Shown in pieces: positions 3,001 through 28,136 of a stretch of 64,000 bases of DNA. The stretch lies in the IMG/VR virus record IMGVR_UViG_3300028364_000014, positions 1 through 64,000 of that record. The stretch is one strand, 5' to 3'. The position numbers were made by a program, and so were the translations under genes. Under the pieces are notes generated by a model. It was not told the DNA's origin, ran no database searches, and worked only from the letters and a program-made list of their open reading frames with translations. Within the stretch, counting starts at the first letter, position 1, and each line of letters starts with the position of its first letter.

Positions 3001-6000
3001 AGCATAATCCTCTGACACACCAAGTTCATGCTGTTTTAAGGTTACAAAACCTTTATCCTTTTGATTCTTAATTATCTCAGAATGACCTTTTGATACACCC
3101 TTAATTTTATTAGCGGCTTCTTGTAAAGATTTTATTTCTTCAGTACCAAGATCAGAGTCTTTTGACACACTTTCAAGAGCTTTAGCAAAAGCATTTAAGT
3201 CATCAGTCTTATCCACCATCGCCGTAGTGGCTTTAGCCATAATAGCTGGAATCTTACGTGTAAAAAAAGCTTCTTGTACAGAACCAGTTTTCCCTAAAAC
3301 AGTTTGAGCAAGCGTGTGATAATATTCTATTTTTGCTCTATCTAAACTATCCACAGCCTGCTGTAATCGATCTTCCTTAGTGGCAGGAGTAACCTTCAAC
3401 CCCTTTGCTAATTTATTAAGGTCTTGAACCCCAGATCTAAAACTCTCATCTATCATAGAGTCAACGTCATAACGTCCTTGATGTTTTAATGGAGAAGACT
3501 CACGTTTACTAGGATCTAACCCTATTATTTGATCAACAGCAGCATTAATAGTCTCAGAATAAGCTTGAGGTTCTTTTTGACCACGTTCCTTTTGTTTTGT
3601 GTAAAGCTGTCCCATAACGTAATCTTTTTTAGTTCCACCTCCCCTATTAAATGCCTGATCTACCTGACTATCCCCCATTACATCAGTCAAGCCGCGTAAT
3701 GTCGCCTCTAAACTAGATTGATCTTGCGGATCTAAAAAATCTTTATATTGTATTTTACCTTGCTCATTTCTACCTTTACCATCTACAGAAACTACACGAT
3801 CTACCTCTTCACGCAGCTCCTGCATATGTTTTATAATCCTACCCTTTGTATCAGATTTATTGGTACTACCGTCATCACTTATCTCGGCACCATTAATAAT
3901 ATCTTCAAGATGTTTTGCAGAGTTAATTACCTGAGTTAGTCTTCTGGATACCCCATCCAAGCCCCGTTCTCCAGCTAGTAAAGGTTCTGGATAAGTAGTC
4001 CTTGCTAAAGCCCCCGGCACATAAAAAGACTCTTTTTTACTTATATCCCTTGTATCTGGAATAGAAACATCCATGGCCCCTGGAAACTTGGCTGTATCTA
4101 ATACAGTACTAACTAAACTCCGTTCCGGATCTAAATCTTTACCAAAACCACCAGTAGACCCGTAAAAAGAATGTAACTCATCTAAACCTACCTTCTGAGC
4201 TGAACCTAACAAACTTTGTTTTAATTCAGGAGAGTCTGTATTTAAAACCTGTAACCCTTTTAAATACTCCCAGTGCTTTCTTGCGTCTAAAGGAATCTCA
4301 CCAGAAACTCCTTGCATCATTGCAGAATCTTTACCAAATATGGTAGAGTAGGCACCATAAGCCGGTATATTTAGTTTCTCACCTTTAACTTGATTCTCTA
4401 TGTCAGACTTGCTCCACGCTGGATTAGCACTTGGATCTTCAACTATCTCTACAAACTTAGGACCAACAAAACCTTTCCTAGCTTTACCAAACTCATCTAT
4501 AATACGTGAGTAATAACTACTTTTAGCTTCTAAAGCTGCAGCTGCGTTTGCTTCTGTAACCGCTTTATCTCGTTTAGATAAAGACTCGGTTTCATCTTCT
4601 GAAAGTACGCCCCCCTTAGTCTTTTTATCTCTAAGTCCCTTTGCCTCAGTACCAGATATCAAACCCCTACTGACTGTCATATCCTTTAACAAAGAATCAC
4701 GTATGGACCCTTGTGACTTTCCAGTGCCTGAAAAACCCAAAACTTTACTATATTCACCTAGACTAGGAAATAACTCTTTACCTTCTTCCATAGTACCAAG
4801 CATGCTTTTATAAGTATTAGTATCAAACTTAGTATTTAATGTTGTAGACCCTTGCCAGCCAGATCCAATTACGTTATTCATCATCATCTCAAGGCTTTCT
4901 GTTTGAAGACCACGTTTACCAGCATTACTAGAGTTAATTCTAATATCTATAGGTTTTTCTTCAAACTGTTTAGCTCCTTCTACTTCCTTACGATGTAACA
5001 TTTTTACACCAGCTATACCAGATAAACCTTGTTCTAACGAACCCCCAAAAGAATTAACCATTTTCTTGGCATCCTCAAAAAGATCCGATTGTACCATTGC
5101 ATCTTTTTCAGAAACCACCCCTGCTGATTTATCAGTAAACATACTCATCATAAATTTACTACCACTAGCTTTTAACTGATCCTTTAATAAATCAACGTCC
5201 TTACCTGTGTACTTGGTCCCTGTTTCAGAGTCCGGGTCACTTCTTAGAATAACTGCTCTATTTTTTTGTATAACCTCAGAAAGTAACGAACCCATACTTT
5301 TTGGAAGAATAGCAGTACCTAATCCTGCTTTTTCTCTCTCAGAATCACTTAGTACTTTTATATTTTTAGTCTTATAGGCGGCTTCTAATACAGACGAATC
5401 TTTAAACCCTTTAGAAGGAGATACAGCCACTCCCTTCATACCATACCTGGTAGTAAATTTTCTACCATAGTAGTTAAAAAAGGTTTCAGCTATCTTAGCG
5501 GTCTGTACGTTTATATCCTGTCCCCTAGCTACGGTAACAGCCTTCTGTATATCTGTTATTAGTGTTTTATCAGCCCTACCTCTATACTTTTGTGGCACAC
5601 CTAGTACATTTTGAAATACTCTATTAAGTTCATCTATTTGCGCTAACGGATCTGTATCAGTAAGTACATTACCCTGCCCTTTCTTTCCGCCTTCCCCTTT
5701 AATTCTAGATCTAATATCTTCCACACTGATTGCATTACTCGGTAGATCTCGTAAATTACCTTCACTTGTTATTAAATCCAATCTACCTAAAGCGTCAGGC
5801 TGCACGATTGTTTTAGTAACACTGGTAAGTACTTCTGCTAATTTACCTGAAATAACCATCTGGTCTTCAAATGTATTTGCAGTACTTCTTAACTCAGCTA
5901 TTACATTGAAACCATAACCTTGATCCCCGTACCTGCCGCCAGCAATCTGCTCGTTCTCCCTAGTAGACCTTAATCCTGGAAACTCAGTACCAGGCACACC

Positions 6001-9000
6001 TTTTTGTCTGTAAGCCATAGCATTAGTAGTACTGGCAATATTTCTGCCTGCCTGCTGAAATTGTTGTCCAAAAGGTGACATCTCAGGTAAAACATCAGAG
6101 TGCATTTTCAAATTAGTAGCCTTTAAACTACTAAGATATTTACTGTCTTCCTTAAAAGATGATCTGTATTCATCTAACGTAGAGGCGGAAGACTCAGGAA
6201 CACCAAGGGTAGATAAAGTTGTAACATCTTGTGGTATATTTCTAGCATACTCAGTAGTAGATAATACCTTAGATTCATTCATATAGTTTTTTAATACCAT
6301 ATTTAAATCACGTATATAACTTTTAGATTGATCAGGATCTAACCCAGCTGCACCTTTCTCATAAACCGGCGAGGTCATAGTCATCATATTGACTATTTTT
6401 TCTTGATGTGCATATCTTCTTGGTCTAGAGGGGTCTGCTATAGGTATTGTACCCACTAGCTTACTTAGATAAGACTCATACTCGCGAACTGTTTTATCAT
6501 GATTTGGATTTTTTGTAAGTTTATCAATTGGAGACTCTCCTGGAGCGTAATTGGATAGTACTTTTTCAAATACTTGGTATATATTTTTAAAATCAACTGT
6601 TTCCATACGTTTAACCACATCAAGAGCAGACACTCCAGCACCATCCATAGCTTGTATGAATTGCCCTACTGAAATTGAACCATCCTTTAAACTTTCACCC
6701 ATTTGATCTATATTTCTAATAGCTTCTACTTTAAATGTTTCAGGGTCACCTTGCTCCGTACGTGCTAACTCCGCTGATCTAACAATAGCCCCTTTTTTAT
6801 ATGTGCTCACTAATCTACCTTTATTTGCGTCACTTGCAGAAGCGAGATCTGTAAGCATCTCCTGAGCTAGTTTATTAGACTCAACATACTCTTTTCTATC
6901 AGGGCGTATACCTGCTTTTTGTATTCTTTCAGTGTACTTTTCTGGCATATTAGTACCAAAACTTTTAAGCTGATTAAATAGATTTTCAAAACCAGTTTTA
7001 TATTCGGCAAATTTAGGTATAACTCGTTGACTACCAGTAGATGTTTCAAATATTTGAGCACCTGTCTCAGTAAGACGTGCTGCGGGTACAGCTAAAGTCC
7101 TGGTAAGAGCACTCCTACTTTTACTACCTTTTGACGATCCAGCTACTCCAATATTAAGCCGTTTATTGGCTTCCATCTCCCCTAAAGTTTCCTGGTAAAT
7201 ACTCTCTAACTTACCAATATTCATACTATTAAGCATATCACTCATTTTTTTAGGAACGCCTGGACCAGCTTCATTAGTTTTATTTTTAATTCTAACTAAA
7301 TTTTCAGCAGAGTCTGGTTGAGAAAACTTCCAAGACTTTATATCATCAGTGGGTACACGCTTTAACCAAGTACCTACGGATTCACCAAGATTACTCCTAT
7401 TCTTATTTAAAAGGTCATTCTTAACTGTATCTTTAAATAAGCTTTTAAGTGCCTCAGGTGATTGAGTCCTATCAACAGGAGTAAAATCTTTATTATCCCG
7501 CCTCATTTTTTCAATTTCTTTAGCGATAGCCCCAACATCCGCAATTTGAAAAGTCCATTGTTTACCTGCTACTTTCTTATTAATACCAGAAGCAAGCTTA
7601 AAATATTCTGACGGATCTTGAGCGTCATCCCCCCTAAGAATTTTCCACTTTTGTGACTGAGTGATGACTTTAGTTTTTTTATCATAAGTTTGTTCAACAG
7701 GACCTCGCAATGCCAAGCCTTCTTCAACCTGCTTAATCATAAAATTCCTTAGATCCATTAAAGATTTAGCAGTAGTATTAACATTCTCTTTAATGATCTG
7801 TCTTGCTTTCTCTCCTGTATCAATACGGGTTTTAGGTGTGGGCAATTCATAATCTTTTCCTGGGGTAATTACATCTGATTTATACCCGTATAAAGTTTCT
7901 TTTGATGTTTTATACTTGTAGTCTGCAGGAGCCGATTTTTGACTAGTTTTAATATCCTTACCAAGTCTAAACTTCTCAGACTGCTCCCTCATACGCTGTC
8001 TTACTTCAATTTGTTTAAGTTTATCTTGCTCATTTGTACTTGGTAGTCTATTTTGAGAAGTAGAACCTGTAGTTCCAGAAAAAGGATTAGATGTTTGTTG
8101 GCTATTTATAGCGTCTGTTAAATCAGATAACTTGTCACCAAGAGAGGCTATTAACCTAGTAATATCACGAGGTAATATTTCCTTAGACAATAAGTTACCA
8201 GCAGTTTTAGTGTCTATACCACTAGTAATCACAGCTTTAAGTTTATTTGGGTCGTCTTTAGAAGCAGCAATCTGTGTTACTACTTTCATAATAGCGTCGT
8301 AAAGGCCCTGTGATGACTGGTTTTTAGGTTCAACGTAAAGATTAGATCTTAAAGTATCTTTAAGTACTGATAAAAACTGGTTAAGGTCAGAAAATATTTT
8401 TTCATCGGGCTTATTTCCTGTAGTACTTGAAGCGGATACTGCGACATTAAATTGTTGTTTAAAATCAGACTGTAGTTGAGTTATAAGTTTTTGAGAATCA
8501 GTAACTAGTTCAATATTAAACGGTGTAGAGTCAGCCTTCTTTCTAAGCTTTTCTAGATCACTTATTATAGTATTTTTAGACACAGAAGCAGTGAAATCGA
8601 CATTCTTACTCCTACCTAAGTCGTCTAAATCTTTTTTTGCACCTTTAAGACTTTTATCTGTAACTACAGATAAGGGAACCTCAATACCGGCTAATGACTT
8701 TATATCTTTAATAAAAGTAGCTACTTCTCCAGCACCTTCTACAACAAGTTCTAATTTAGCATTCCAATCTTTAACCTCTTTATTATTGGTAACACCTTTA
8801 GGTACTAATTCTTTAGGTATCATAGATACAGCGTCAGTTAACTTAACTAAATTCCCCTTTAAAGCATCAGCATCTATAGACCCAGAAGGACTACCCTTCA
8901 ATTCTTCTACTAGCTTAGTTAGCTGCTTCATAACAACAATAAAATCAGGAACACTCTCTAACTTTTTAGCTATAGCATCTAAAGATTTTCCCACCTCAGA

Positions 9001-9921
9001 CTCTTTTGCTTGAGGGATTTTGTTTATTACTTTAGATATTTCTGAAGTTATTACTTGAGCTAATTTTAAAGGATCTTCAGTGGCTTTTTTTACCACCGCA
9101 GTCTTCTTCTTAACAGCGGACGCCCTAAAACTTGTCACACTTTCTTTAAAAGCTGATGCCCCATCATTAAACTCTTTAGGAAGCTTCTTAACTTCACTAC
9201 GCACCAAAGTAATATCAGCAATTAACTCTTTAAAAGCAGTACCCATTTGAGCCATCAAACTTAAATACGTTTTAAACTCGGTTATATCAAAACCACCACC
9301 ACTTTTACGCTGCTCATTTACAGCCTTACCAGCAGAAGCTATTTTAGTAAAACTTGACTCTAATCTTTTTAAAATAGCAGAAATATCTTTGAGAGAAGCT
9401 ATCATATCAGTAGGCATAGCTGCTTTTAAATTAGAATTCAATGCATTCTCAATACCTTTAAAAACTGAGGGATCTATTGTTACTACACCCTTAGTGTTTT
9501 TAGATAACTCATCTGCAAAGTTTTTATATGCGATTTCTCTTTGCTTACTAGATATTTTCAATGCGGAAGCAACATCTACCAGGCCTGACTCTGGAGACTT
9601 TTGTACTTTAGCAGCTACATCTTTAACAGACTGCTTAGTGATGTCCACAACAAGGCGTTGTAACATATTGGCTAATTCAGTCTTGGTTACACCACCACTA
9701 TCTCCAGACGCATTACTAGTTATAACCTTACTAAGGATAGTAGGGAGTTCTTTTTTAATAGCAGATGCTACCGCATTAACGATACCGTCCTGCGTGCTTG
9801 ACATCCCCTTATTAAACTCAGTGTATAATTGCTTTAAGCTGGAATTTGGGGCTGACTGTTCATTTGCCCCTGAAGTGGTACCAGTAGATTTAATATTTAT
9901 ATTGACGTTTTTTTCGCCCAA
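1..9921 (-). CDS. Giant tape-measure-position protein containing a single-chain two-barrel (beta + beta-prime) RNA polymerase; 3' end beyond window
   Basis: TTG start at 9921 with GGAGG 7 nt upstream. The frame is consistent at every point checked down to position 1 (3307 codons); its absence from the ORF track fits an ORF running off the edge. In-frame motifs: ANTFEDQMVISG (~5845-5880), GRKFTTRYGMKGV (5428-5466), VLGKTGSVQEAFFTRK, SVRYPFTGTSSVQPYE (~2750-2793), LDFDGDQIEVH (DFDGD 2449-2463), IQKGMDVKHAG (1636-1668). Follows tail tube and chaperone genes. Confidence 0.85.
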   Translation of the reverse strand, partial: MGEKNVNINIKSTGTTSGANEQSAPNSSLKQLYTEFNKGMSSTQDGIVNAVASAIKKELPTILSKVITSNASGDSGGVTKTELANMLQRLVVDITKQSVKDVAAKVQKSPESGLVDVASALKISSKQREIAYKNFADELSKNTKGVVTIDPSVFKGIENALNSNLKAAMPTDMIASLKDISAILKRLESSFTKIASAGKAVNEQRKSGGGFDITEFKTYLSLMAQMGTAFKELIADITLVRSEVKKLPKEFNDGASAFKESVTSFRASAVKKKTAVVKKATEDPLKLAQVITSEISKVINKIPQAKESEVGKSLDAIAKKLESVPDFIVVMKQLTKLVEELKGSPSGSIDADALKGNLVKLTDAVSMIPKELVPKGVTNNKEVKDWNAKLELVVEGAGEVATFIKDIKSLAGIEVPLSVVTDKSLKGAKKDLDDLGRSKNVDFTASVSKNTIISDLEKLRKKADSTPFNIELVTDSQKLITQLQSDFKQQFNVAVSASSTTGNKPDEKIFSDLNQFLSVLKDTLRSNLYVEPKNQSSQGLYDAIMKVVTQIAASKDDPNKLKAVITSGIDTKTAGNLLSKEILPRDITRLIASLGDKLSDLTDAINSQQTSNPFSGTTGSTSQNRLPSTNEQDKLKQIEVRQRMREQSEKFRLGKDIKTSQKSAPADYKYKTSKETLYGYKSDVITPGKDYELPTPKTRIDTGEKARQIIKENVNTTAKSLMDLRNFMIKQVEEGLALRGPVEQTYDKKTKVITQSQKWKILRGDDAQDPSEYFKLASGINKKVAGKQWTFQIADVGAIAKEIEKMRRDNKDFTPVDRTQSPEALKSLFKDTVKNDLLNKNRSNLGESVGTWLKRVPTDDIKSWKFSQPDSAENLVRIKNKTNEAGPGVPKKMSDMLNSMNIGKLESIYQETLGEMEANKRLNIGVAGSSKGSKSRSALTRTLAVPAARLTETGAQIFETSTGSQRVIPKFAEYKTGFENLFNQLKSFGTNMPEKYTERIQKAGIRPDRKEYVESNKLAQEMLTDLASASDANKGRLVSTYKKGAIVRSAELARTEQGDPETFKVEAIRNIDQMGESLKDGSISVGQFIQAMDGAGVSALDVVKRMETVDFKNIYQVFEKVLSNYAPGESPIDKLTKNPNHDKTVREYESYLSKLVGTIPIADPSRPRRYAHQEKIVNMMTMTSPVYEKGAAGLDPDQSKSYIRDLNMVLKNYMNESKVLSTTEYARNIPQDVTTLSTLGVPESSASTLDEYRSSFKEDSKYLSSLKATNLKMHSDVLPEMSPFGQQFQQAGRNIASTTNAMAYRQKGVPGTEFPGLRSTRENEQIAGGRYGDQGYGFNVIAELRSTANTFEDQMVISGKLAEVLTSVTKTIVQPDALGRLDLITSEGNLRDLPSNAISVEDIRSRIKGEGGKKGQGNVLTDTDPLAQIDELNRVFQNVLGVPQKYRGRADKTLITDIQKAVTVARGQDINVQTAKIAETFFNYYGRKFTTRYGMKGVAVSPSKGFKDSSVLEAAYKTKNIKVLSDSEREKAGLGTAILPKSMGSLLSEVIQKNRAVILRSDPDSETGTKYTGKDVDLLKDQLKASGSKFMMSMFTDKSAGVVSEKDAMVQSDLFEDAKKMVNSFGGSLEQGLSGIAGVKMLHRKEVEGAKQFEEKPIDIRINSSNAGKRGLQTESLEMMMNNVIGSGWQGSTTLNTKFDTNTYKSMLGTMEEGKELFPSLGEYSKVLGFSGTGKSQGSIRDSLLKDMTVSRGLISGTEAKGLRDKKTKGGVLSEDETESLSKRDKAVTEANAAAALEAKSSYYSRIIDEFGKARKGFVGPKFVEIVEDPSANPAWSKSDIENQVKGEKLNIPAYGAYSTIFGKDSAMMQGVSGEIPLDARKHWEYLKGLQVLNTDSPELKQSLLGSAQKVGLDELHSFYGSTGGFGKDLDPERSLVSTVLDTAKFPGAMDVSIPDTRDISKKESFYVPGALARTTYPEPLLAGERGLDGVSRRLTQVINSAKHLEDIINGAEISDDGSTNKSDTKGRIIKHMQELREEVDRVVSVDGKGRNEQGKIQYKDFLDPQDQSSLEATLRGLTDVMGDSQVDQAFNRGGGTKKDYVMGQLYTKQKERGQKEPQAYSETINAAVDQIIGLDPSKRESSPLKHQGRYDVDSMIDESFRSGVQDLNKLAKGLKVTPATKEDRLQQAVDSLDRAKIEYYHTLAQTVLGKTGSVQEAFFTRKIPAIMAKATTAMVDKTDDLNAFAKALESVSKDSDLGTEEIKSLQEAANKIKGVSKGHSEIIKNQKDKGFVTLKQHELGVSEDYAKKLPARFKRRYAQDNTGDLKRVKQTQGETLKELLEYRELLETGNPSGMDEVNKMDVRDQLKNELTPYIESVRYPFTGTSSVQPYEAKLLKEESKDGGGRFLAKHTLMAPGVPEMDLGGFAEAKNKVEDVITGLSAKREEEWDKEDPDLDKIKKLTGTINQLNKAVSDVIPKYIAHQQKLDFDGDQIEVHSAQTMAARQDIAKHYKKITTFDKDVNSTAQVFRDSFTYGATTGEKSTGEFLFAEQQMKFNKKFPEQEGFKFLESPFLTEDLEYLDKSKRLDILSNIPNSTGVTPEPAQVLENVARNIFRDDKTIDSVVKTLDSVKLGDDKGINIEMLRAALATLPEGVGKSIDLGVRDELYEAKHANTVNAQLYKINTGQDTEGLNRVLKIFESNLGFGKGEISDTADFSPSVELQKRFPMDLKSLGKGMGNELNTMVNELVRVGIQKGMDVKHAGETPIASEIVGSLSKGPKGVAELQSNIETNKSYGDLKDFSDAQKKATSIRLGGMSTSDLFDDALKIAQGGGDKFKATSLAQDKVEGKLDRSALKAYITEALGFNSFLEELSRQIQEAAIEGVERDLAKMSPTKRNIKLGTKKPREYAENLIGDQMRSKGIDIKNTAEEHLTPLYHLRTSAASPYSQRTRYNKKYDDVAAPELKNFKLRDSDERKVFEKKFKEARAVAKNLKDSFGDLSSYGKDDLGSYALLGQSTVENLFNDQKKIASINAQLEGNKDILEIAPMNRIAQDNHLPFVKDIMDQPINEAYKALEQLNRTVGMPVMDKADQIQLEDKYADDAAVFVRSQVDPNDEEKTNVENDKIRKKLALLEQLDRLTKAAATKAKEGDFLGSLFEKSDLSLEEKYKQSRSRLKEGSQYNLSNIPPSMGTGATSVGGGGGMASTGSGSTGIPSFTGGGPLTYDSGKVVPVHIHSIADNAGVMLGAGRGMAATTGGGGQFSDKMTAKIEEAQKIVQELTGGLNNLKDSDFGQKYRASQLKGKASMSGP

Positions 9922-12089: not shown

Positions 12090-12113
12090 TAAGGGAGGGA
12101 ATTACCCCTCCCC
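12090..12113 (-). terminator. Stem-loop after tail tube gene, possible terminator
   Basis: GGGAGGGG-TAATT-CCCCTCCC perfect 8-bp hairpin just after the stop at 12123; weak U-tract. Confidence 0.45.
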
Positions 12114-12122
12114 TAATCAAAA

Positions 12123-13599
12123 TTATGCGTTACGCGCAAGCCTAGCTTTTGCAGTAGCATAATTAATATCACCTTTTATAACGTATAGATCATTAGTGGT
12201 TCTAAATCCAAAAGTCTGAGTAGCATTAGATCCAACATCTAGAGACATACCTTCATCAGTAATCTTCAGGTTTTTAACTACAACCGTTTTTAGAGCACGT
12301 TCAGTATCCCCAGCTGCATAGGTATCAAGAACACCGTCAAGGAAGTAATCCTCACCGTCAAGAGCAGAACCACTGACAACTTTTCTATCAGTACTAGTTC
12401 CTCCAGCCTCCTCATCTGTTTGTTCATATACCTTAACTACGAGGATAAGATTATCCTTAATCATAAGATCACTAAGTTTAATATCCCCCATAGTATCCAA
12501 ATCATCCAACTTTCCTGCAAACTTTGCCCAGTTCTCCAAATCACCAGCTGTAGTATCTACAGTCAATGTAATAGGAATAGGCATAGTTAGAGGTCTATCA
12601 TAAGGTCCTAAATGCCCTAACTCAGTAAGAGGCTCACGAGTCAAATCAACTGAAATATTAGCACTCGTCAAACGCCAAGCATTAGCAAACGCTGTAGCAG
12701 AAGAATCCGGATCTACGATATACACCTCTACCTGACCCTGTCTAAGGGCACCAACACTATCAGGTCTTTCAGTAGGCTCTTCAAGCTCAACAAAATAATT
12801 ATTAGTAGTAGGAGTATAAGCATCCGCAGAGTAAATCAACTGAAGCCTGTCACCATCTGCTGGAGCATTAGTTCCTGTAGGTAGATAAAGCTTATGTTGT
12901 GCTGGCATAGTGGTATTATCATAAACATAAGTAGTCGCAGCAGCTGCCGTGCCGGTTACAACCTCAACGTTAATCATCTCATTTTTACTTTCATCGAACC
13001 AAGTAACAGCAGGAGCTCCACTATCACTCTTCCGTAGAAAACCAAGCCCTGTAGTTAGTGTAGCTACATCATTACCAGCCCCTAAGGTCATCATAACAAA
13101 TCCATCTGTTAGAGCCCCAGCTGATAAAAGGGTAAACTCCTCGTAGTTTACAAACCTACCATCATTTAACAACCACATCTTGTTATCAGTCTCTGCTCCA
13201 TAATTCTCTGTAGCATTTGCTCCAGTAGAGTAACTAAATTCGAGACTATTAACAAAAAGCTCATCAAGAAACAATGTCTGATCAATATTATTAGACAATG
13301 TTCCAATAGAACATTCCTCTTGTACTGGTGCCCATAAAGTTACACCAGGCAAGTTACCACAAGTTACTGCAAAGTCTGCTAGAGATACCCCATGCAGATA
13401 ATTAGCAGTCCCTGTTGGATCTGATACCAAATTCGCATTACCATCAACTGCGGTAATAGCCATCTCAACCTTGGCTGGGATAACCTGAGCCAATGTGGCT
13501 AAAGTCTTAACATCCCCAAAGTCATTAGTGTTCAATGTTACTGAAACGGCAGGGACATCATCTACTACGTCGATTATATCTAAGTGACCAAGCTCAAAT
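12123..13599 (-). CDS. Major tail (tube) protein, exon 2 (spliced product about 528 aa)
   Basis: Joining exon 1 (...GAC AT) to 13599 (A TTT GAG...) gives the continuous frame TSEDIFELGHLDIIDVVDDVPAVSVTLNTNDFG, in frame with track ORF 12123..13535. Beta-rich, Thr/Asp/Gly-rich, at the tail-tube position. Confidence 0.8.
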
Positions 13600-14665
13600 C
13601 ATTCTGTTACTTTTAGTGACCTCAGCTTTACCTGTTAGGCGGGGAAAGTTCTTCGACTCTCCCTCTTGGCGTCTCCGCCAAGTTCAGACTGTACCTTCAC
13701 CCTTTTTAAAAGGGGTTTCACACGCAGTCGTTGGGGAACAAATTTATAATGTATACATTCTGGTAATATATATGTTACCATATCCAGTAAATCATGTAAG
13801 TATTTAGTTTTACCTAGTCTTATAGTACTATTATAAGTATCAATACTTATAGTACCTTTAAAAAATTTACGTAAAGCTACTATTAAGACCTCTATTTCTT
13901 CTAAAGTAAAACTACATGTAGCAATTGAACCTCTTAAGGCTGTTTTACTACCATGAAAAGAAAAACTTCCATCATCAGCTAACCAAATACAAAGAGCTAA
14001 TAAATCTAAATCTTCTATTACATCAGTAATTACTCTTTTTTTACCTTTAACATAAAACTTATTAAAGTACTCAGTTATATCTGGATGAGCAATTGTGTTA
14101 ATAAAATAGTAACCTGAAGAGTATGAATTTTTACCATTAATAATTTTAGGTCCTGGTTTTTCTGCTAAAGTTATTTTTTTAACAAATGGAGATAATAAAT
14201 CTTTTTTCCATTTTAAGTAATCTAATTGTTTAGTACAATGACCAATTTGCAATCTAGCATTTTTAGATTTCCTATTCTTTAGCAAAGAGCCGTCTCCTAA
14301 AATAGAGCCTAATATAACAGATCTATGAACATCTGATATTTCTACAGATCTTAACTCTTCATAAACAGTCATACAACTAGGTAAAAGTTCTATATCATAA
14401 GATTTATACCACGAATATATAGTACTATAGGGTATAGATAACTCTGTAGCAACTTTGGCCACAGATTTATGACAATCTATTAATTCTTGAAGTTTTTCTT
14501 TACTTACTTTATTTCTTTTCATTATAAATCCTTTCCTGCGGATTGTCTATATCTTTAAGATTATTACTACCAATTCAGGTTAGTACCTAAAGCTTAACTA
14601 GAGTTTCCCGCATACCGTGAAATTTTTTCTCTTACTTGTTACCAAATAAGGGACACATTTAGTTT
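13600..14665 (-). ncRNA. Group I intron (1066 nt) interrupting the tail tube gene
   Basis: P1 GGACAU/GUGUCC with U.G at the 5' splice site; P10-like AAAU/AUUU; core elements GCGGGAAACUC, GACAAUCCGCAGG, ACGACUGCG, AAGGUACAGUCUG; terminal G at 13600; splicing restores the frame. Confidence 0.9.
13635..14522 (-). CDS. Intron-encoded LAGLIDADG homing endonuclease with N-terminal HTH
   Basis: Two motifs, VILGSILGDGSL and LCIWLADDGSF; the ORF reads through the 3' half of the intron core. Confidence 0.88.
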   Translation of the reverse strand: MKRNKVSKEKLQELIDCHKSVAKVATELSIPYSTIYSWYKSYDIELLPSCMTVYEELRSVEISDVHRSVILGSILGDGSLLKNRKSKNARLQIGHCTKQLDYLKWKKDLLSPFVKKITLAEKPGPKIINGKNSYSSGYYFINTIAHPDITEYFNKFYVKGKKRVITDVIEDLDLLALCIWLADDGSFSFHGSKTALRGSIATCSFTLEEIEVLIVALRKFFKGTISIDTYNSTIRLGKTKYLHDLLDMVTYILPECIHYKFVPQRLRVKPLLKRVKVQSELGGDAKRESRRTFPA

Positions 14666-14775
14666 ATGTCCTCGCTCGTAAATGATGTCGTGGTTCCTAG
14701 AGACTGTACTCGATAGAGCACTTCTCCATTAACCCAAACTGATTGTGAAGCATAGATTATTCTATTTCTTGCCAT
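14666..14775 (-). CDS. Major tail (tube) protein, exon 1
   Basis: AGGAGG RBS, ATG at 14775, MARNRIIYASQSVWVNGEVLYRVQSLGTTTSFTSED plus 2 nt; missed by the ORF track. Confidence 0.85.
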
Positions 14776-14867
14776 GTTTTAAATCCTCCTGTTAATTTTT
14801 TTTTATACTGCTTTCAGGTTGGTATGATAATTCATGTCCGTATTACCAGTTATATATTGAGGCTTTA

Positions 14868-15929
14868 CTATACAACCGATAACCTTTCCTTTATATTATA
14901 TCTTTTATACAAAATTGATTGATACCAATTCTTATGCCAAGTTCTATCTTTATTGGCTTTACTATTACAAGAACGACAGATGGTTATTAAATTACTTGGG
15001 TTACAGTTCTTTTTATCATAATCAATGTGATGAATTGTTAAATCCTTTGGATTTTTAGAATTACAGTACGGATTTAAACATTTATTTCCATCACGATTTC
15101 TTATGTCTTGTTTGTATTCTTTATCCTTCCAGGCTTCACAGTACGGCTCAAAGGTGATACCACCCTTCCAATTATAGTTTTTATCCCCTGATATACTTAT
15201 AAAATAGCAATCAGGGCATCTATGTCCAGACGACCAATCTTTCCAATTTATAGAGTTATAATGCCCTTTAGAACATTTATACTTTAATTTAGTACGTGCA
15301 TTTTTATACTCATTACTCAATAAAATATATTCCTCACTTTCAAAGGATTTTCTTATTTCATATATTGTGGGCATTATTTTAGCCATATAACACTTTGAAC
15401 ACCTAGAGCTATTACGATTCCAATTTTCCCAACTTACTTTGTAAACATGCCCTTTTGGGCATATAGAAATAAGTTTACTATTTCTATTAATATATTTATC
15501 ACTTAATAAAGTATAACCTTCTAACTCAAAAGAAGCTTTTATTTTTTTAAATGATGCCCTCTTTTTACCAGAGCACTCCATACACCTATTACCAAGTAAC
15601 CAATTATTCCAAATAACACTACCTAAATGCCCTTTAGGACAAATATACTTTAATTTACTTTTAGAATTTATATATTTATCAGTTAAAAGTACATAGCCAG
15701 CATCATTAAAAGAGGCTCTCACAAAATCGATAGATAATTTCCTATTACCTACACATTTAGAACATCTTACACCCTTTCTTAAATGATCTATACGCATACT
15801 ACCCTCGTGCCCTTTGTCGCAAACATATTTAAAAGATTGTCTAGAATTAACGTATACGGTTGACACTAAAGTATACTTAATTTCTTGAAACTCTTTTCTA
15901 ACTCTCTCTATTGTTAATTTTGAAGGCAT
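14868..15929 (-). CDS. HNH homing endonuclease, family A (CxKGH zinc-ribbon repeats)
   Basis: Repeated YxCxKGH...W..W....RCxxC units; C-terminal LTIHHIDYDKKNCNPSNLITICRSCN. Confidence 0.85.
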   Translation of the reverse strand: MPSKLTIERVRKEFQEIKYTLVSTVYVNSRQSFKYVCDKGHEGSMRIDHLRKGVRCSKCVGNRKLSIDFVRASFNDAGYVLLTDKYINSKSKLKYICPKGHLGSVIWNNWLLGNRCMECSGKKRASFKKIKASFELEGYTLLSDKYINRNSKLISICPKGHVYKVSWENWNRNSSRCSKCYMAKIMPTIYEIRKSFESEEYILLSNEYKNARTKLKYKCSKGHYNSINWKDWSSGHRCPDCYFISISGDKNYNWKGGITFEPYCEAWKDKEYKQDIRNRDGNKCLNPYCNSKNPKDLTIHHIDYDKKNCNPSNLITICRSCNSKANKDRTWHKNWYQSILYKRYNIKERLSVV

Positions 15930-18236: not shown

Positions 18237-19085
18237 TTAATATCTATTTTTAATTATTGCTCTATACCAAGCTTTGTGCCACGTTCTATTTTTATTAGCC
18301 ATAGAATTGCACGATCTGCAAATTGTTATTAGATTACTTGGTTTGCAATTTTTTTTATTATAATCTATATGATGAATAGTTAGATCATTTGGATTTTTAG
18401 AATTGCAATACGGATTTAAGCATTTATTATTGTCACGATCTCTTATACTTTGTTTGTATTCTTTGTCTTTCCAAACTTCACAATAAGGTTCGAACGAGAT
18501 ACCACCTTTCCAATTATAATGACCAGTGCCTGCATTCTTAATATGTGAACAAGTAGGGCATCTGTATCCTTGCTGCCAATCAGCCCAAGTAATTAAATGT
18601 GTGTGCCCTTCCTTACACGTGTAACCTAACTTATCTTTACTACGTTTATATTTATCAGATATAAGTGTATACCCTTCTTTTTCAAAAGATTTTTTAACTG
18701 TGCTTAGAGTTGGCTTACCTTGTCCTACGCAATAAGGACATCTGTGTCCTTGCTGCCAATCAGTCCAAGTAATAGAATGCTTATGCCCCTTAGAACAAAT
18801 ATAATCTAACTTAGTGTAAGCGTTTTTATATACTTTAGAAACAAGTATATAATTAGCATTATTAAAACAAGTTCTTACATATTCAATAACAAGAGTAGTA
18901 TTTCCTACACAAGTAGGGCATCTATGGATTTGTTGCCAATCATTCCAAGCAATGCTGTGCTTATGTCCTTTAGGACAACTATAGTCTAACTTATGTTTAT
19001 TATTGATATACACTTCACTAAGCAAAACATAACCTTCTTTTTCAAAAGAATCTTTTACGTATTCTATTGTTAATTTTTTACCCAT
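18237..19085 (-). CDS. HNH homing endonuclease, family A
   Basis: CPKGH/CSKGH repeats; LTIHHIDYNKKNCKPSNLITICRSCN. Confidence 0.85.
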   Translation of the reverse strand: MGKKLTIEYVKDSFEKEGYVLLSEVYINNKHKLDYSCPKGHKHSIAWNDWQQIHRCPTCVGNTTLVIEYVRTCFNNANYILVSKVYKNAYTKLDYICSKGHKHSITWTDWQQGHRCPYCVGQGKPTLSTVKKSFEKEGYTLISDKYKRSKDKLGYTCKEGHTHLITWADWQQGYRCPTCSHIKNAGTGHYNWKGGISFEPYCEVWKDKEYKQSIRDRDNNKCLNPYCNSKNPNDLTIHHIDYNKKNCKPSNLITICRSCNSMANKNRTWHKAWYRAIIKNRY

Positions 19086-21124: not shown

Positions 21125-21991
21125 TCAGTTAATTACAAAATTAGTTATTAAATCAAAGCACTCATCTCTATACCAACTTTTATCACTAATACGTAATAAG
21201 TTAATATTATTATCCGCACAAAATATATCCTTAATTTTATCTCTAAAAATCATGTCTTTTCTGGAATGCCAATATTCACCGTCACATTCTATTGCTTTAT
21301 TAATATCCGGCAAATAAATATCAAGCTCTAAATATTTACCAGTTACTTCGTTAAATACTACCTCTCTATTATTATATAAAATATTACCATCATATATATT
21401 TTTTATGTACTCTCTAACGGATTGTTCAAACTTAGAAGTATAATTATTTTGTGAGTAACAAATAAAACATCTATTATTATTATCTTTAAAATTATGAACG
21501 GTCGAATACCATTTATGCCCTTCTGGACATTCTAATAATAATTTACCAACATGCGAATTAATGTAATTTGAACTATCAATTATATTATAATTATAATTAT
21601 TCAAATAAATAGTAAAAATTTTAAGATCATTTATTCGTTTTTTTTCTTGATTTGATTTAGTAATATATTTTTTCTTAATATTACGCTTTTTTTCTGCTTT
21701 TAGATTATTTTTTTTTAATCTGGATTTTTCACATGATAGACTGCCACAAGTAGTCTTATTTTTATAATAAGTAATAAATTCTACACCGCAAAACTTACAA
21801 TTGCGCGTAAATTCTACATAATTATTTCTTTTCCTACTTTGGTTTCTCCATTGAATCTTTTCTCTATCTTGTTTAGCAATATCTTTACAATTATTACAAT
21901 ATTTTTGACTGCCTGAAGTAGGTGTAAAAACCTCATTACAACCCGACATAGTGCATACTTTATCTTTATACATTTTAGTCCTTTTATCCAA
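21125..21991 (-). CDS. Endonuclease of Vsr/DUF559 (EDxHD-like) type with N-terminal Zn motifs
   Basis: LELDIYLPDINKAIECDGEYWHS motif; CPEGH repeat shared with family A HNHs. Confidence 0.75.
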   Translation of the reverse strand: MDKRTKMYKDKVCTMSGCNEVFTPTSGSQKYCNNCKDIAKQDREKIQWRNQSRKRNNYVEFTRNCKFCGVEFITYYKNKTTCGSLSCEKSRLKKNNLKAEKKRNIKKKYITKSNQEKKRINDLKIFTIYLNNYNYNIIDSSNYINSHVGKLLLECPEGHKWYSTVHNFKDNNNRCFICYSQNNYTSKFEQSVREYIKNIYDGNILYNNREVVFNEVTGKYLELDIYLPDINKAIECDGEYWHSRKDMIFRDKIKDIFCADNNINLLRISDKSWYRDECFDLITNFVIN

Positions 21992-22801
21992 TTAACATAC
22001 AAAATTTGCTATATTAATTGTTGTGCAATTATCCCTATGCCCAAATTTGTAATGACAGATACTGCAACAGGCTATTCCATTGTCTGGGTCCAAAGCATAA
22101 AACGATTCTAGTTTTTTTGGTTGTATATGATGTGCGACTGTTGCTTGCTTACCACAATATTCACATACGTACTTAGCTCTTTTAAGTACCTCTTTTGACC
22201 ATATTTGTAATTCATAACTTGTATATTCAATTATATTCCTACTTTTTCTTACATTAAATCCTACTGGATATTTATGTTTATTAAATATACTACAAGATGA
22301 TCTACACCCATCAGAACAATAAAGTTTTGATTCTCTATCTATATTACCTTTTATATATTGTGCACGAGCCTCCACAGAAGTTCTTTTAGCTACAAACCAT
22401 TCACCACATAATGAGCATTTTACTAAAAGAATACCATTATCATTCTTTACCTCTTCTATAGGAAAAATTTGATGAGCATAAGTATCAAATAATGGAATGT
22501 TTTTTTTAATCACACCGCCTTTTGACATTCTTTTTGAAATAGCCTTACACTCTTGTTTTGACTTCTTTACACCAGACATACTTTTTGAAATTTTCTTTTT
22601 TATTGTTTCTGATTGATGAGCACAATTAGCACTACATATTTTTGTAGGATAAGTAGCCCTCATAAAAAATGACTCACCACACACACTACAGGAATTTATA
22701 AATTTATAATACAAACGTTTTCTTCGAAACACATCTCTTTTATATATATAAGAAAAACTATCTAAATTTTCAAGTCCATCATTACCATACTTAATCTTCA
22801 T
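21992..22801 (-). CDS. HNH endonuclease with Zn-binding modules
   Basis: YVCEYCGKQATVAHHIQP...NGIACCSICH; CSLCGEWF and LYCSDGC modules. Confidence 0.8.
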   Translation of the reverse strand: MKIKYGNDGLENLDSFSYIYKRDVFRRKRLYYKFINSCSVCGESFFMRATYPTKICSANCAHQSETIKKKISKSMSGVKKSKQECKAISKRMSKGGVIKKNIPLFDTYAHQIFPIEEVKNDNGILLVKCSLCGEWFVAKRTSVEARAQYIKGNIDRESKLYCSDGCRSSCSIFNKHKYPVGFNVRKSRNIIEYTSYELQIWSKEVLKRAKYVCEYCGKQATVAHHIQPKKLESFYALDPDNGIACCSICHYKFGHRDNCTTINIANFVC

Positions 22802-22884: not shown

Positions 22885-23958
22885 TTATAAACTTCTATCT
22901 ATAATACCCATGCCCAGCATTCTCGAATCTAGGCAAGCGAATCCGAGCTCTGCCCAACCAAAGAAACCTTGTTTCTGAACACGAAGAAGAGTGGGATCAT
23001 CATGAGCCTCATATTCTTTACGAATAGGCATAACAAGAGAATCATTAACACTAAGGTCAAACCCCATAATCTGTGTCTCGCCGAGATCACTAATAGTACC
23101 ATCAGCAGCAGTCACATTAGGATTATCAAGTGTATACCCATTATACTGCTCAGTACCAGCAGTGGCCACAAACTTACCATAAGCAGAGGCACTACCATTA
23201 ATGTTATAAAGTCCTGTTGCTCCTAGATGTTGAATCTCATGAAGAGTTACATTCCAAATACTACCCATACCTGACGCCTGAAAAATCTCACGCCTAGTAA
23301 CAGGGTCAATATCAGTGTCAGTCCACTCTCTGATGTCAGCAGCATCCTCTGGGGATACATAAAGATCAGTAAGTGTCCTGCCTGTCCTCTTAAATCCTAC
23401 AATCATCTTATTAATTAATTCCTTAGAAAGATATCCAGCTCCAGCAGCAGAAGGTGCGATCTCATAAAGAGGTGCAGGGCGTGAACCAAGTAGCCCTTTT
23501 CCTGAGAAAGCAGAAGTAGCAGCAGGCATAATAACACGCCAACCACACTCCTCCTCATAATTTGCTAGATCTTTTGCGGCACGCGTTGCTGCTCTTGAGG
23601 CAATATCAATCCTGGAATCCCTTGCGTATGTAATTTTCCAGTCAGCTGCCGCATCAATAGTAAACGTAGGAACGTATACCTCTTCACCAATACCTTCGAT
23701 GAAGTTCTGTGCAACATAACCAAGTCCTGGAAGTACCCATACTGGAATCTCAAAATCTTCTGCGACGGGATAAACCGCCTGAGCGCCCGGGCCTAATCTT
23801 TCCACTGTAAAGAGCTGACGCATAATAGAGTCGAGCTCGATCTTTTGTAGTATTGGAGTTGTTAAAGCAGCTGCAAATGCTCGATAAGCAGCCAAACCTT
23901 CAGGGGTATTAACCTCTGCGGTTGCTCTAAAAAGCTCCATCATTTCCTTTCTTTCCAT
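22885..23958 (-). CDS. Major capsid protein (HK97-like fold)
   Basis: 357 aa after scaffold and decoration genes; C-terminal QKQGFFGWAELGFACLDSR typical of MCP ends; strong GGAGG RBS. Confidence 0.8.
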   Translation of the reverse strand: MERKEMMELFRATAEVNTPEGLAAYRAFAAALTTPILQKIELDSIMRQLFTVERLGPGAQAVYPVAEDFEIPVWVLPGLGYVAQNFIEGIGEEVYVPTFTIDAAADWKITYARDSRIDIASRAATRAAKDLANYEEECGWRVIMPAATSAFSGKGLLGSRPAPLYEIAPSAAGAGYLSKELINKMIVGFKRTGRTLTDLYVSPEDAADIREWTDTDIDPVTRREIFQASGMGSIWNVTLHEIQHLGATGLYNINGSASAYGKFVATAGTEQYNGYTLDNPNVTAADGTISDLGETQIMGFDLSVNDSLVMPIRKEYEAHDDPTLLRVQKQGFFGWAELGFACLDSRMLGMGIIDRSL

Positions 23959-27958: not shown

Positions 27959-28136
27959 ATGACACCGCTTTTATATTATACCTATTCTTAAGCACCACCC
28001 GATGCCAACCTTTATGCCCCTTCTGACAAATACAATCTAATTTATAACCATTATTGACATACTCTTTACTAAGTAAAGTATAATCTTCTGAATCAAATGA
28101 CTCTTTAACAAATGCATATGTAAGTCTCTTACTCAT
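27951..28136 (-). pseudogene. Internally deleted remnant of a family A HNH endonuclease
   Basis: First CQKGH repeat fused directly to the family A C-terminal tail (W..VLKNRYNI); nuclease core absent. Confidence 0.65.

What the first reader, a model, noticed from the sequence alone, without database searches (positions are those of the whole stretch)
12123..14775. Group I intron with LAGLIDADG endonuclease splits the major tail protein gene
Seen: an unannotated 110-nt exon (RBS, ATG 14775) ends in GGACAU, which pairs with intron GUGUCC to give the U.G splice site; the intron ends in G13600; ligation restores a 528-aa frame. The endonuclease ORF reads through the catalytic core. Known: phage group I introns are mostly in DNA-metabolism genes and usually carry HNH or GIY-YIG enzymes. 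An intron in an abundantly needed structural gene, carrying LAGLIDADG, is uncommon and makes tail assembly depend on splicing.
Basis: partly seen in the sequence, partly recalled or inferred. Interest (0 to 1): 0.65.

Follow-up and report, generated by a model that had tools for sequence, protein, structure and literature searches.

The report
Self-splicing intron in phage tail-tube gene
The main tail-tube gene of an uncultured giant lake phage is interrupted by a mobile self-splicing group I intron that carries its own LAGLIDADG DNA-cutting enzyme; this is a real but not unprecedented arrangement, and relatives carry up to three such introns in the same short stretch of the gene.

Summary
On the minus strand, a 110-nt exon (14775-14666) and a 1477-nt exon (13599-12123) flank a 1066-nt insert (14665-13600). 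More than 100 uninterrupted homologues of about 520-535 aa read exactly the predicted ligated sequence across the join (...TSEDIFELGHLDIIDVVDD...).

- **Intron:** both halves of the insert hit Rfam's group I model as truncated matches. An ORF-less relative that is 85-91% identical scores 62 bits against a cut-off of 50. Helices P3, P4, P7 and P9 covary across 14 related introns.
- **ORF:** it encodes a double-motif LAGLIDADG enzyme (PF03161, E 4e-28; nearest solved structure I-SceI). It sits in the P6 loop, reads through P7-P3'-P8-P9, and is under purifying selection.
- **Host protein:** it has no sequence-family match. It folds like the duplicated tail-tube proteins of T5 and P74-26, and lies between the head genes and a giant tape-measure-like gene.

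No RNA data exist, so splicing itself is inferred. Precedents exist: the Twort tail-tube gene orf142 has three group I introns, and Cluster J mycobacteriophages have capsid and tail introns. I therefore class it as a new member of a known kind.

One addition: about a fifth of related phages carry related introns at five sites within 48 nt of this gene.

The parts
14785..14790 (-). Shine-Dalgarno AGGAGG of the tail-tube gene, 9 nt upstream of the ATG
   Evidence: Read directly from the sequence.
14666..14775 (-). Exon 1 of the major tail (tube) protein gene. It is 110 nt: codons 1-36 plus two bases of Ile37. It ends GGACAU, the 5' strand of P1.
   Evidence: Its translation is 100% identical to residues 1-37 of the uninterrupted homologue P0002 and near-identical to the other N-termini shown.
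13600..14665 (-). Group I intron, 1066 nt, from the first base after the splice-site U to the terminal G13600
   Evidence: Rfam RF00028 gives truncated hits at 14500-14675 (23.1 bits, E 3.4e-4) and 13665-13800 (20.1 bits, E 3e-3). The intron is 85% and 91% identical to the ORF-less intron L008:3727-4002, which scores 62.1 bits against a cut-off of 50.
14651..14662 (-). Internal guide sequence. GUGUCC (14656-14651) pairs with the end of exon 1 to form P1. UAAAU (14661-14657) pairs with exon 2 AUUUG (13599-13595) to form P10.
   Evidence: Read from the sequence. P1 shows compensatory changes in relatives, for example GGACGU/GCGUCC and GGAUAU/GUAUCC. P10 changes from AUUUG/UAAAU to AUUCG/CGAGU in L004.
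14631..14650 (-). P2 hairpin, CUUAUUUG-GUAA-CAAGUAAG, with a GNRA loop
   Evidence: The helix is kept with different sequences in relatives, all with GNRA loops.
14537..14622 (-). 5' half of the core: P3 5' strand UUUCAC (14622-14617), P4 UGCGG (14612-14608) paired with CCGCA (14541-14537), and the P5 extension between them
   Evidence: P3 is paired in 84 of 84 cells with 2-3 pair types at every position. P4 is paired in 70 of 70 cells with G-C, U-A and C-G at one position.
14520..14536 (-). 5' strand of an extended P6 stem. It contains the endonuclease's ribosome-binding site (AGGA) and its AUG.
   Evidence: It pairs 16 of 17 positions with 13751-13735. The duplex energy is -15.0 kcal/mol against -5.6 +/- 2.2 for shuffled sequences. 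All 10 ORF-bearing relatives keep the stem, with compensatory changes.
13635..14522 (-). Intron ORF of 295 aa. It has an N-terminal helix-turn-helix (residues about 11-43) and a double-motif LAGLIDADG endonuclease (ILGDG at D77, LADDG at D184). The last 23 codons are a read-through tail.
   Evidence: PF03161 matches at E 4e-28, residues 67-233, and phrog_11023 also matches. I-SceI is the best PDB hit at E 5.6e-7. dN/dS against relatives is 0.12-0.20. Relatives stop at or just after P8.
13735..13751 (-). 3' strand of the extended P6 stem, lying inside the ORF (codons for HYKFVP)
13665..13729 (-). 3' half of the core: P7 GACUG (13729-13725) paired with CAGUC (13691-13687), P3 3' strand GUGAAA (13721-13716), the P8 hairpin (about 13715-13699), and P9 CUUGGCG-GAGA-CGCCAAG (13682-13665)
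   Evidence: Rfam alignment. P7 is paired in 70 of 70 cells, switching between G-C and A-U. P9 shows up to 5 pair types per position. This motif occurs only once in the 238-kb record.
13600..13663 (-). Peripheral 3' elements: the P9.1 hairpin (13663-13642), the P9.2 hairpin (13639-13620), the conserved GUAACAG, and the terminal G13600
   Evidence: Both hairpins are kept with covariation in relatives.
12123..13599 (-). Exon 2 of the major tail (tube) protein gene: the last base of Ile37, 491 codons and the stop
   Evidence: 809 homologues were found, the best 73% identical. A model of the uninterrupted homologue P0002 matches the P74-26, T5 and DT57C tail-tube proteins.

Best explanation
The gene for the major tail-tube protein of this uncultured phage (238 kb or more, salt-lake or lake origin) is interrupted after the second base of codon 37. 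The interruption is a 1066-nt mobile group I intron.

**Shown from the sequence**
- The two exons join to give exactly the invariant N-terminal sequence of the uninterrupted homologues.
- The intron has a complete group I core: P1 with a U.G pair, P2, P3-P9, P9.1, P9.2, P10 and a terminal G.
- A roughly 790-nt insert in the P6 loop encodes an I-SceI-like monomeric LAGLIDADG protein with an extra N-terminal helix-turn-helix.

**Inferred**
- After transcription of the late structural operon, the RNA folds and an external guanosine attacks the bond after U14666. The freed exon 1 then attacks the bond after G13600, and the ligated mRNA is translated into a 528-aa tube protein. Tail assembly therefore depends on splicing.
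- The endonuclease's ribosome-binding site and AUG are locked in a 16-bp extension of P6. Its reading frame runs through P7, P3', P8 and P9. Translation of the endonuclease and folding of the ribozyme are therefore mutually exclusive on any one RNA molecule. This should keep endonuclease expression low and protect splicing.
- In a mixed infection, the endonuclease cuts the intron-less allele of a related phage near the insertion site. Repair from the intron-bearing copy then copies the intron in (homing).
- The protein may also, or instead, help splicing as a maturase.
For: **Join.** The exact junction SED-I-FELGHL is seen in uninterrupted homologues.

**Ribozyme.**
- Rfam RF00028 hits both halves.
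- Three ORF-less relatives in L008 score 89.7, 80.4 and 62.1 bits against a cut-off of 50.
- The window's halves are 85% and 91% identical to the third of these.
- Over 14 related introns, P3 is paired in 84/84 cells, P4 in 70/70, P7 in 70/70 and P9 in 88/98, all with compensatory changes. P1 and P10 change together with the exon sequence.

**ORF.**
- PF03161 at E 4e-28.
- I-SceI homology.
- Both catalytic Asp motifs are present.
- dN/dS is 0.12-0.20.

**P6 stem.** The stem over the ribosome-binding site and AUG is -15 kcal/mol against -5.6 for shuffles, and is conserved in 10 relatives.

**Host protein.**
- Foldseek top hits are the tail tubes of P74-26, T5 pb6 and DT57C, at E 5e-6 to 3e-5 and probability 1.00. 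BFVD hits include proteins named major tail protein.
- Gene order is TerL, portal, major head, then this gene, three small genes and a giant ORF.

**Mobility.**
- The intron is present in some related loci and absent in most. All true intron-bearing alleles carry GAC at codon 36.

**Real DNA.** Independent metagenomes carry the same arrangement.
Against: - No RNA evidence exists. No run holding this DNA is on record as RNA, so splicing, its efficiency and the order of events are inferred.
- The window's intron does not itself reach Rfam's gathering score. A scan of the whole region finds nothing, because the ORF splits the core.
- The tail-tube assignment rests on a model of medium confidence (mean pLDDT 70.5) with modest TM-scores (0.34-0.48), and on gene order. 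Pfam, PHROGs and PDB sequence searches are blank.
- Residues 23-55 of the model, where the intron sits, have pLDDT below 50.
- Endonuclease activity and target are untested.
- No intron-less variant of this same phage was seen in the four runs laid.
Confidence: 0.9

Rival explanations
1. The insert is a decayed or immobile intron. It still splices, but its ORF no longer acts as a homing endonuclease. The ORF is either inactive or retained only as a splicing helper (maturase).
For: The window's ORF has lost the stop codon that relatives use and runs 23 codons further into P9.1. No intron-less allele of this same phage was seen in four runs. From general knowledge, LAGLIDADG proteins of organellar group I introns are known to act as maturases.
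Against: Both LAGLIDADG motifs and their Asp residues are intact. dN/dS of 0.12-0.20 over 245 codons shows selection on the protein. The patchy distribution among relatives, and closely related ORFs at different sites, point to recent mobility.
Confidence: 0.15
2. The insert does not splice. The gene is broken, and the phage makes its tube protein from the internal TTG at 13535, or is defective.
For: There is no RNA evidence for splicing. Gene callers predict the downstream ORF alone, for example the 480-aa P0001.
Against: The first 58 residues that would be lost are nearly invariant across 40 homologues. The ribozyme core is intact and covaries. The same arrangement persists in many independent samples and in diverged phages. 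P1 and P10 define exactly the in-frame join.
Confidence: 0.04
3. The host gene is not the tail-tube protein but another abundant virion protein with a tube-like beta-sandwich fold, such as a distal tail or baseplate-hub protein.
For: Fold matches also include T5 and DT57C tail-tip or baseplate chains, which share the tube fold. TM-scores are modest, and no sequence family supports the name.
Against: The best matches are tail-tube chains and proteins named major tail protein. The position, after the head and connector genes and before three small genes and a giant tape-measure-like ORF, is that of the major tail gene in siphophages. The extreme conservation and abundance of homologues fit a major structural protein.
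Confidence: 0.12

Closest known systems
Staphylococcus phage Twort orf142 (tail-tube gene) with three self-splicing group I introns (Landthaler and Shub 1999, as cited in PMC11878797)
   Same: Group I introns interrupt a phage tail-tube gene. Several introns are packed into one short gene region, as in relatives L008 and L046, which carry three each.
   Different: Twort is a myovirus of Firmicutes with a small, unrelated tube protein. As far as I recall, its orf142 introns carry no LAGLIDADG ORF. Splicing there was shown experimentally; here it is inferred.
Cluster J mycobacteriophage introns in capsid and tail genes (PMC3706429)
   Same: Likely group I introns in late structural genes of large siphophages, and one carries a LAGLIDADG-like ORF. 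Presence is patchy among close relatives.
   Different: In LittleE the ORF is I-CreI-like, 177 aa and on the opposite strand. The tail intron sits in a minor tail gene and has no ORF. Neither the sequences nor the hosts are related.
Phage T4 td intron with I-TevI
   Same: From my own knowledge of the T4 literature, not tested here: the endonuclease ORF is looped out of P6, and its translation start is sequestered in RNA structure, so that translation does not disturb splicing.
   Different: I-TevI is a GIY-YIG enzyme and the host gene is thymidylate synthase. The T4 ORF does not read through the 3' core.
I-SceI, the monomeric LAGLIDADG endonuclease of the yeast mitochondrial 21S rRNA group I intron
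   Same: It is the best solved-structure relative of the window's ORF (E 5.6e-7, residues 142-260). Both belong to the PF03161 family and have the double-motif monomer architecture.
   Different: Sequence similarity is low. The window's protein has an extra N-terminal helix-turn-helix, and its C-terminus is encoded by ribozyme core sequence.
Bastillevirinae DNA-polymerase intron with a LAGLIDADG_2 ORF (phrog_11023; PMC11878797)
   Same: The same PHROG and Pfam family of endonuclease, inside a phage group I intron. Rfam likewise sees only partial hits on either side of the ORF.
   Different: The host gene there is DNA polymerase. That study found introns only in DNA-metabolism and terminase genes.

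Membership tests
Group I intron (Rfam RF00028) | P1 helix between the exon 1 end and an internal guide sequence, with a U.G pair at the 5' splice site | tested here: met
   GGACAU (14671-14666) pairs with GUGUCC (14656-14651). Relatives show compensatory P1 changes.
Group I intron (Rfam RF00028) | [quoted passage not shown] | tested here: met
   G13600 is the last intron base. UAAAU pairs with AUUUG. In L004 the P10 pairing becomes CGAGU/AUUCG.
Group I intron (Rfam RF00028) | Conserved core helices P3, P4, P6, P7 and P8, supported by covariation | tested here: met
   P3 is paired in 84/84 cells, P4 in 70/70 and P7 in 70/70, with compensatory changes over 14 introns. The alignment and counts are my own script.
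Group I intron (Rfam RF00028) | Score at or above Rfam's gathering cut-off of 50 bits | tested here: inconclusive
   The window's two halves give 23.1 and 20.1 bits as truncated hits, and nothing when scanned whole, because the ORF splits the core. ORF-less relatives that are 83-91% identical score 62-90 bits.
Group I intron (Rfam RF00028) | Guanosine-dependent self-splicing | not testable with these tools
   No RNA run holds the stretch. An in vitro assay is needed.
LAGLIDADG homing endonuclease (PF03161, I-SceI-like) | Pfam score above the gathering cut-off | tested here: met
   98.9 bits against 25, at E 4e-28.
LAGLIDADG homing endonuclease (PF03161, I-SceI-like) | Two LAGLIDADG motifs, each with the catalytic acidic residue | tested here: met
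   VILGSILGDGS (residues 69-79, D77) and LALCIWLADDGS (175-186, D184). All 10 related ORFs keep the acidic residue; one has E in the second motif.
LAGLIDADG homing endonuclease (PF03161, I-SceI-like) | Site-specific cleavage of the intron-less allele | not testable with these tools
   The only indirect evidence is the patchy distribution and dN/dS of 0.12-0.20.
Siphophage major tail-tube protein with a duplicated tube domain (T5 pb6 / P74-26 type) | Tail-tube fold | tested here: met
   Foldseek gives 8ed0 at E 4.6e-6, 9iny at 7.9e-6, 8hrg at 3.1e-5 and 5ngj at 2.2e-3. TM-scores are modest (0.34-0.48), and the model is of homologue P0002 with pLDDT 70.5.
Siphophage major tail-tube protein with a duplicated tube domain (T5 pb6 / P74-26 type) | Sequence membership in a named tail-tube family | tested here: not met
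   No hit in Pfam, PHROGs, PDB by sequence, or cultured phages.
Siphophage major tail-tube protein with a duplicated tube domain (T5 pb6 / P74-26 type) | Position between the head or connector genes and the chaperone and tape-measure genes | tested here: met
   The order is TerL 30829-33819, portal 28129-30108, major head 22885-23958, this gene, then ORFs of 84, 256 and 334 aa, then a giant ORF at 9921-1. The tape-measure identity of the giant ORF is itself inferred.
Siphophage major tail-tube protein with a duplicated tube domain (T5 pb6 / P74-26 type) | Presence in the virion as the tube subunit | not testable with these tools
   The phage is uncultured.

The most novel reading that the evidence does not exclude
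The window's intron belongs to one family of related group I introns. Within this phage lineage, the family has moved among at least five sites inside a 48-nt stretch (codons 37-52) of the tail-tube gene.

Four of the five sites end in a GAY-RU or GAU word (Asp-Ile, Asp-Val or Asp codons) that matches the intron's guide sequence; the fifth ends in GGU. Identical guide sequences occur at different sites: GCGUCC is found at site A in L005 and at site B in L053. The window's endonuclease (site A) is closest to one at site D (77%). Its ribozyme core is as close to an ORF-less site-B intron (83%) as to any site-A intron.

This pattern would fit site switching by reverse splicing into look-alike sites, followed by endonuclease-driven spread. 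Such switching has long been proposed for group I introns, but natural series that document it are scarce.
Probability: 0.35. Interest if true: 0.6.

Novelty: new member of a known kind. Interest (0 to 1): 0.42.

Why it matters
**Annotation.** The tube gene is mis-called as a 470-480-aa ORF. The true product is 528 aa with an invariant N-terminus. Gene callers make the same error in many metagenomic relatives.

**Biology.** This adds a clear case, in an uncultured giant siphophage-like lineage, of a mobile intron in a highly expressed late structural gene. Production of every tail subunit then depends on RNA self-splicing. The intron also shows a conserved RNA stem that hides the endonuclease's translation start.

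**Wider value.** The set of relatives carries 0-3 related introns at five neighbouring sites, with and without endonuclease ORFs. It is a compact natural series for studying three questions:
- how group I introns reach new sites;
- how they gain and lose endonuclease genes;
- how tightly packed introns with 13-46-nt exons are spliced correctly.

Tried and rejected
**Searches that came back blank**
- An Rfam scan of the whole 5-kb region found no intron. A whole-genome RF00028 search also found nothing. Both fail because the ORF splits the core; scanning the halves separately worked.
- Megablast and tblastn of the region and the tube protein against 50,697 cultured-phage records gave no match.
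- Pfam, PHROGs and a PDB profile search of the tube protein gave no match. Its identity therefore had to come from fold and gene order.
- tblastn of the endonuclease against cultured phages gave only weak hits (28% identity) in crAss-like Bacteroides phages.

**Reads**
- No RNA run holds the stretch.
- Laying four DNA runs showed no intron-less joint, so presence/absence polymorphism within this same phage population was not shown.

**Other tests**
- Searches for a second copy of the endonuclease or of the core motif in the 238-kb record found only this one.
- Exon co-conversion test: all true site-A intron alleles have GAC at codon 36, and most have AGC-GAG before it. Many intron-less alleles share these codons, so the signal is only suggestive.
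- My first regular-expression script for helix extraction failed and was replaced by a column-based count.

**Rejected readings**
- An intein is excluded: the insert has stop codons in the host frame and the ORF is in a different phase.
- A group II intron is excluded: there is no match, and the group I core is complete.

- The joined (spliced) protein of the window was not built or sent to any search or fold tool. The exons were searched by reference, and the natural uninterrupted homologue P0002 was folded instead.

Full report
**1. The observation**

The window is the first 64 kb of a 237,910-bp IMG/VR virus record estimated to be 87% complete. The feature lies on the minus strand, and the sequence shows the following:
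- An AGGAGG at 14790-14785, 9 nt before ATG 14775.
- A 110-nt open stretch, 14775-14666, ending GGACAU.
- An insert, 14665-13600.
- An open frame that continues from 13598 to the stop at 12123.

Each exon was used by reference.

**2. Is the join real?**

A word search with the exon 2 product found 809 homologues. Most of the best 120 are 520-535 aa long. Those shown begin MARNRIIYASQSVWVNGEVLYRVQSLGTTTSFTSEDIFELGHLDIIDVVDD.... That is the translation of exon 1, an Ile, and the start of exon 2, without a gap. P0002 (528 aa) is 100% identical to exon 1 and 73% identical to exon 2.

In an alignment of 40 homologues, nearly every one of the first 66 residues is invariant or at least 90% conserved. 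A protein starting at the internal TTG (13535) would therefore lack the best-conserved part of the family.

The arrangement is not an assembly artefact. Contigs from independent salt-lake metagenomes carry it. One run covers the whole stretch with 4 differences, and others bridge each splice site.

**3. What the insert is**

A scan of the whole region against Rfam found no intron. The two ends scanned separately both hit RF00028 as truncated matches:
- 14500-14675 matches model positions 1-128 (23.1 bits, E 3.4e-4).
- 13665-13800 matches model positions 162-253 (20.1 bits, E 3e-3).

Related phage contigs settle the matter.
- In L008 the same gene region carries three ORF-less inserts of 305, 263 and 276 nt. 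They score 89.7, 80.4 and 62.1 bits against a cut-off of 50.
- The window's first 143 nt are 85% identical to the third of these, and its last 140 nt are 91% identical.
- The window's intron is therefore that core plus an insert of about 790 nt in the P6 loop.

From alignments of 14 related introns I counted pairs for helices defined on the window's sequence.

| Helix | Cells paired | Variation |
|---|---|---|
| P3, whose strands lie on opposite sides of the ORF | 84 of 84 | 2-3 pair types at all six positions |
| P4 | 70 of 70 | compensatory changes |
| P7 | 70 of 70 | switches between G-C and A-U |
| P9 | 88 of 98 | up to five pair types per position |

P2, P5, P8, P9.1 and P9.2 also keep their helices with different sequences. 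P1 and P10 change together with the exon sequence. Examples are GGACGU/GCGUCC in L005, and P10 AUUCG/CGAGU in L004 against AUUUG/UAAAU here.

**4. The ORF**

ORF 14522-13635 (295 aa) matches LAGLIDADG_2 (PF03161) at E 4e-28 over residues 67-233, and also phrog_11023.
- It has two motifs, ILGDG (D77) and LADDG (D184), so it is a monomeric double-motif enzyme.
- Its best solved relative is I-SceI.
- A weak helix-turn-helix signal covers residues 11-43.
- Ten related intron ORFs align over the full length.
- dN/dS against five of them is 0.12-0.20, so the protein is under selection.

All these ORFs read through P6', J6/7, P7 and P3'. The conserved peptide VPQRL is encoded by the conserved ribozyme sequence GUUCCNCAACGACU. 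Relatives stop at or just after P8. The window's copy lacks that stop and runs 23 codons further, through P9 and P9.1, ending 35 nt before the 3' splice site. The statement that the ORF reads through the catalytic core is therefore confirmed.

A further point: the ribosome-binding site and AUG (14536-14520) pair at 16 of 17 positions with 13751-13735, forming a long P6 stem that closes off the ORF.
- Its energy is -15.0 kcal/mol, against -5.6 +/- 2.2 for shuffled partners.
- All ten ORF-bearing relatives keep such a stem (-15 to -21 kcal/mol), with compensatory changes around different start contexts.

I infer that endonuclease translation and ribozyme folding exclude each other on a given RNA. 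As far as I recall, this is the logic described for I-TevI in the T4 td intron.

**5. The host gene**

No sequence family names it. I folded the natural uninterrupted homologue P0002 with a 40-sequence alignment, giving mean pLDDT 70.5 and pTM 0.72.
- Foldseek's best PDB matches are the tail tubes of P74-26 (E 4.6e-6), T5 pb6 and DT57C.
- Matches in the viral library include proteins named major tail protein.
- TM-scores are modest (0.34-0.48).
- The intron-bearing N-terminal stretch is poorly modelled.

Gene order agrees. It runs large terminase (30829-33819), portal (28129-30108), major head protein (22885-23958), this gene, three small ORFs, and then a giant ORF that runs off the window (3307 aa or more). 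In relative L003 the called product at that position is 6921 aa.

'Major tail (tube) protein' is therefore the best reading, at about 0.85 confidence.

**6. Relatives: an intron hot spot**

Among about 75 related viral contigs, most have an uninterrupted gene. Sixteen or seventeen carry one to three introns within codons 37-52. There are five insertion sites.

| Site | Position | Exon 1 end | Loci |
|---|---|---|---|
| A | codon 37, after base 2 | GGACAU | the window; L014 and L077, whose sequences shown match the window's; L004; L005; L049; others |
| E | after codon 41 | GGU | L008, L074 |
| D | codon 45, after base 2 | GGAUAU | L071, L046 |
| C | after codon 50 | GGAU or UGAU | L054, L048 |
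| B | codon 52, after base 2 | GAUGU or GACGU | L053, L008, L046, L074 |

- L008 and L046 each carry three introns, with exons as short as 13 nt. L048 carries two, each with a LAGLIDADG ORF.
- The cores are related (57-86% identity), and relatedness does not follow site. The window's endonuclease is closest to the site-D one in L071 (77%). Its core is as close to the ORF-less site-B intron of L008 as to any site-A intron.
- L005 (site A) and L053 (site B) have the same guide sequence, GCGUCC.

This pattern suggests movement between look-alike sites. I did not test that properly.

**7. What is not shown**

- No RNA run holds the stretch. Splicing, its timing, and any effect on tail production are inferences from a complete and covarying ribozyme and an exact in-frame join.
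- Endonuclease activity and target are untested.
- No intron-less variant of this same phage was seen in four DNA runs.

**8. Comparison with what is known**

Introns in phage structural genes are less common than in DNA-metabolism genes. A 2025 survey of Bastillevirinae found introns only in polymerase, reductase and terminase genes, and says most split phage genes fall in that class (PMC11878797).

They are nevertheless known:
- Cluster J mycobacteriophages have efficiently spliced introns in capsid and minor-tail genes, one with a LAGLIDADG-like ORF. The capsid gene of lactococcal phage Tuc2009 also has one (PMC3706429).
- A LAGLIDADG_2 ORF of the same PHROG occurs in a Bastillevirinae polymerase intron (PMC11878797).

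The window's feature is therefore a new member of a known kind, in a lineage with no cultured representative.

**9. Verdict**

- Confidence that this is a bona fide group I intron with the stated splice sites and a LAGLIDADG ORF: about 0.9.
- Interest is moderate. The single intron is textbook biology in an unusual host gene. The family of neighbouring introns in relatives, and the conserved stem over the endonuclease start, are the parts worth following up.

Noticed in passing
L008:3114-4002; L046:2308-4002; L048:1650-4000; L074:4124-4694; L053, L054, L071 (same gene in related viral contigs): The same 48-nt stretch of the tail-tube gene carries related group I introns at five different sites. 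There are up to three per gene, with exons as short as 13 nt, and the introns occur with and without LAGLIDADG ORFs. Relatedness of cores and ORFs does not follow insertion site.
   Followed up: partly
L065:138-1715: The interval between exon 1 (site A) and the site-B 3' splice site holds three copies of the P4' motif and two of the P7 motif. It has one 382-aa ORF and no recognisable middle exon. It looks like rearranged or recombined introns, and the gene may be defective there.
   Followed up: no
window 30829-33819 (-): The large terminase ORF (996 aa) contains an intein with a LAGLIDADG_3 endonuclease domain, at residues about 134-509. Pfam gives Intein_splicing 35.8 bits and LAGLIDADG_3 at E 2.6e-23. 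This is a second kind of mobile element in the structural module.
   Followed up: partly
window 14868-15929, 18237-19085, 21125-21991, 21992-22801 (all -): Four free-standing HNH or CapR-type homing-endonuclease genes lie between the major head gene and the tail-tube gene. One sits directly upstream of exon 1. The related contig L005 has no HNH-annotated gene directly upstream of its exon 1.
   Followed up: partly
window 1-9921 (-), running off the window: A giant ORF of at least 3307 aa lies downstream of the tail gene and three small ORFs. In relative L003 the called product is 6921 aa. It has no family hit. If it is the tape-measure protein, the tail would be extraordinarily long.
   Followed up: no
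window about 12092-12113 (-): A GC-rich hairpin (GGGAGGG-GUAAUU-CCCUCCC) followed by a U-rich run lies just after the tail gene's stop. It looks like a terminator. It is the source of a weak chance Rfam hit to 'Termite-leu'.
   Followed up: no
L002:1-50, L003:1-50: Two Logan contigs of a relative begin inside the last 35 nt of a site-A intron. This suggests that assemblies tend to break at these introns, so intron frequency may be under-counted.
   Followed up: no
window 13635-13706 (-): The window's LAGLIDADG ORF runs 23 codons past the point where all relatives stop. The tail (LLKRVKVQSELGGDAKRESRRTFPA) is encoded by P8-P9.1 and is probably not functional protein.
   Followed up: yes
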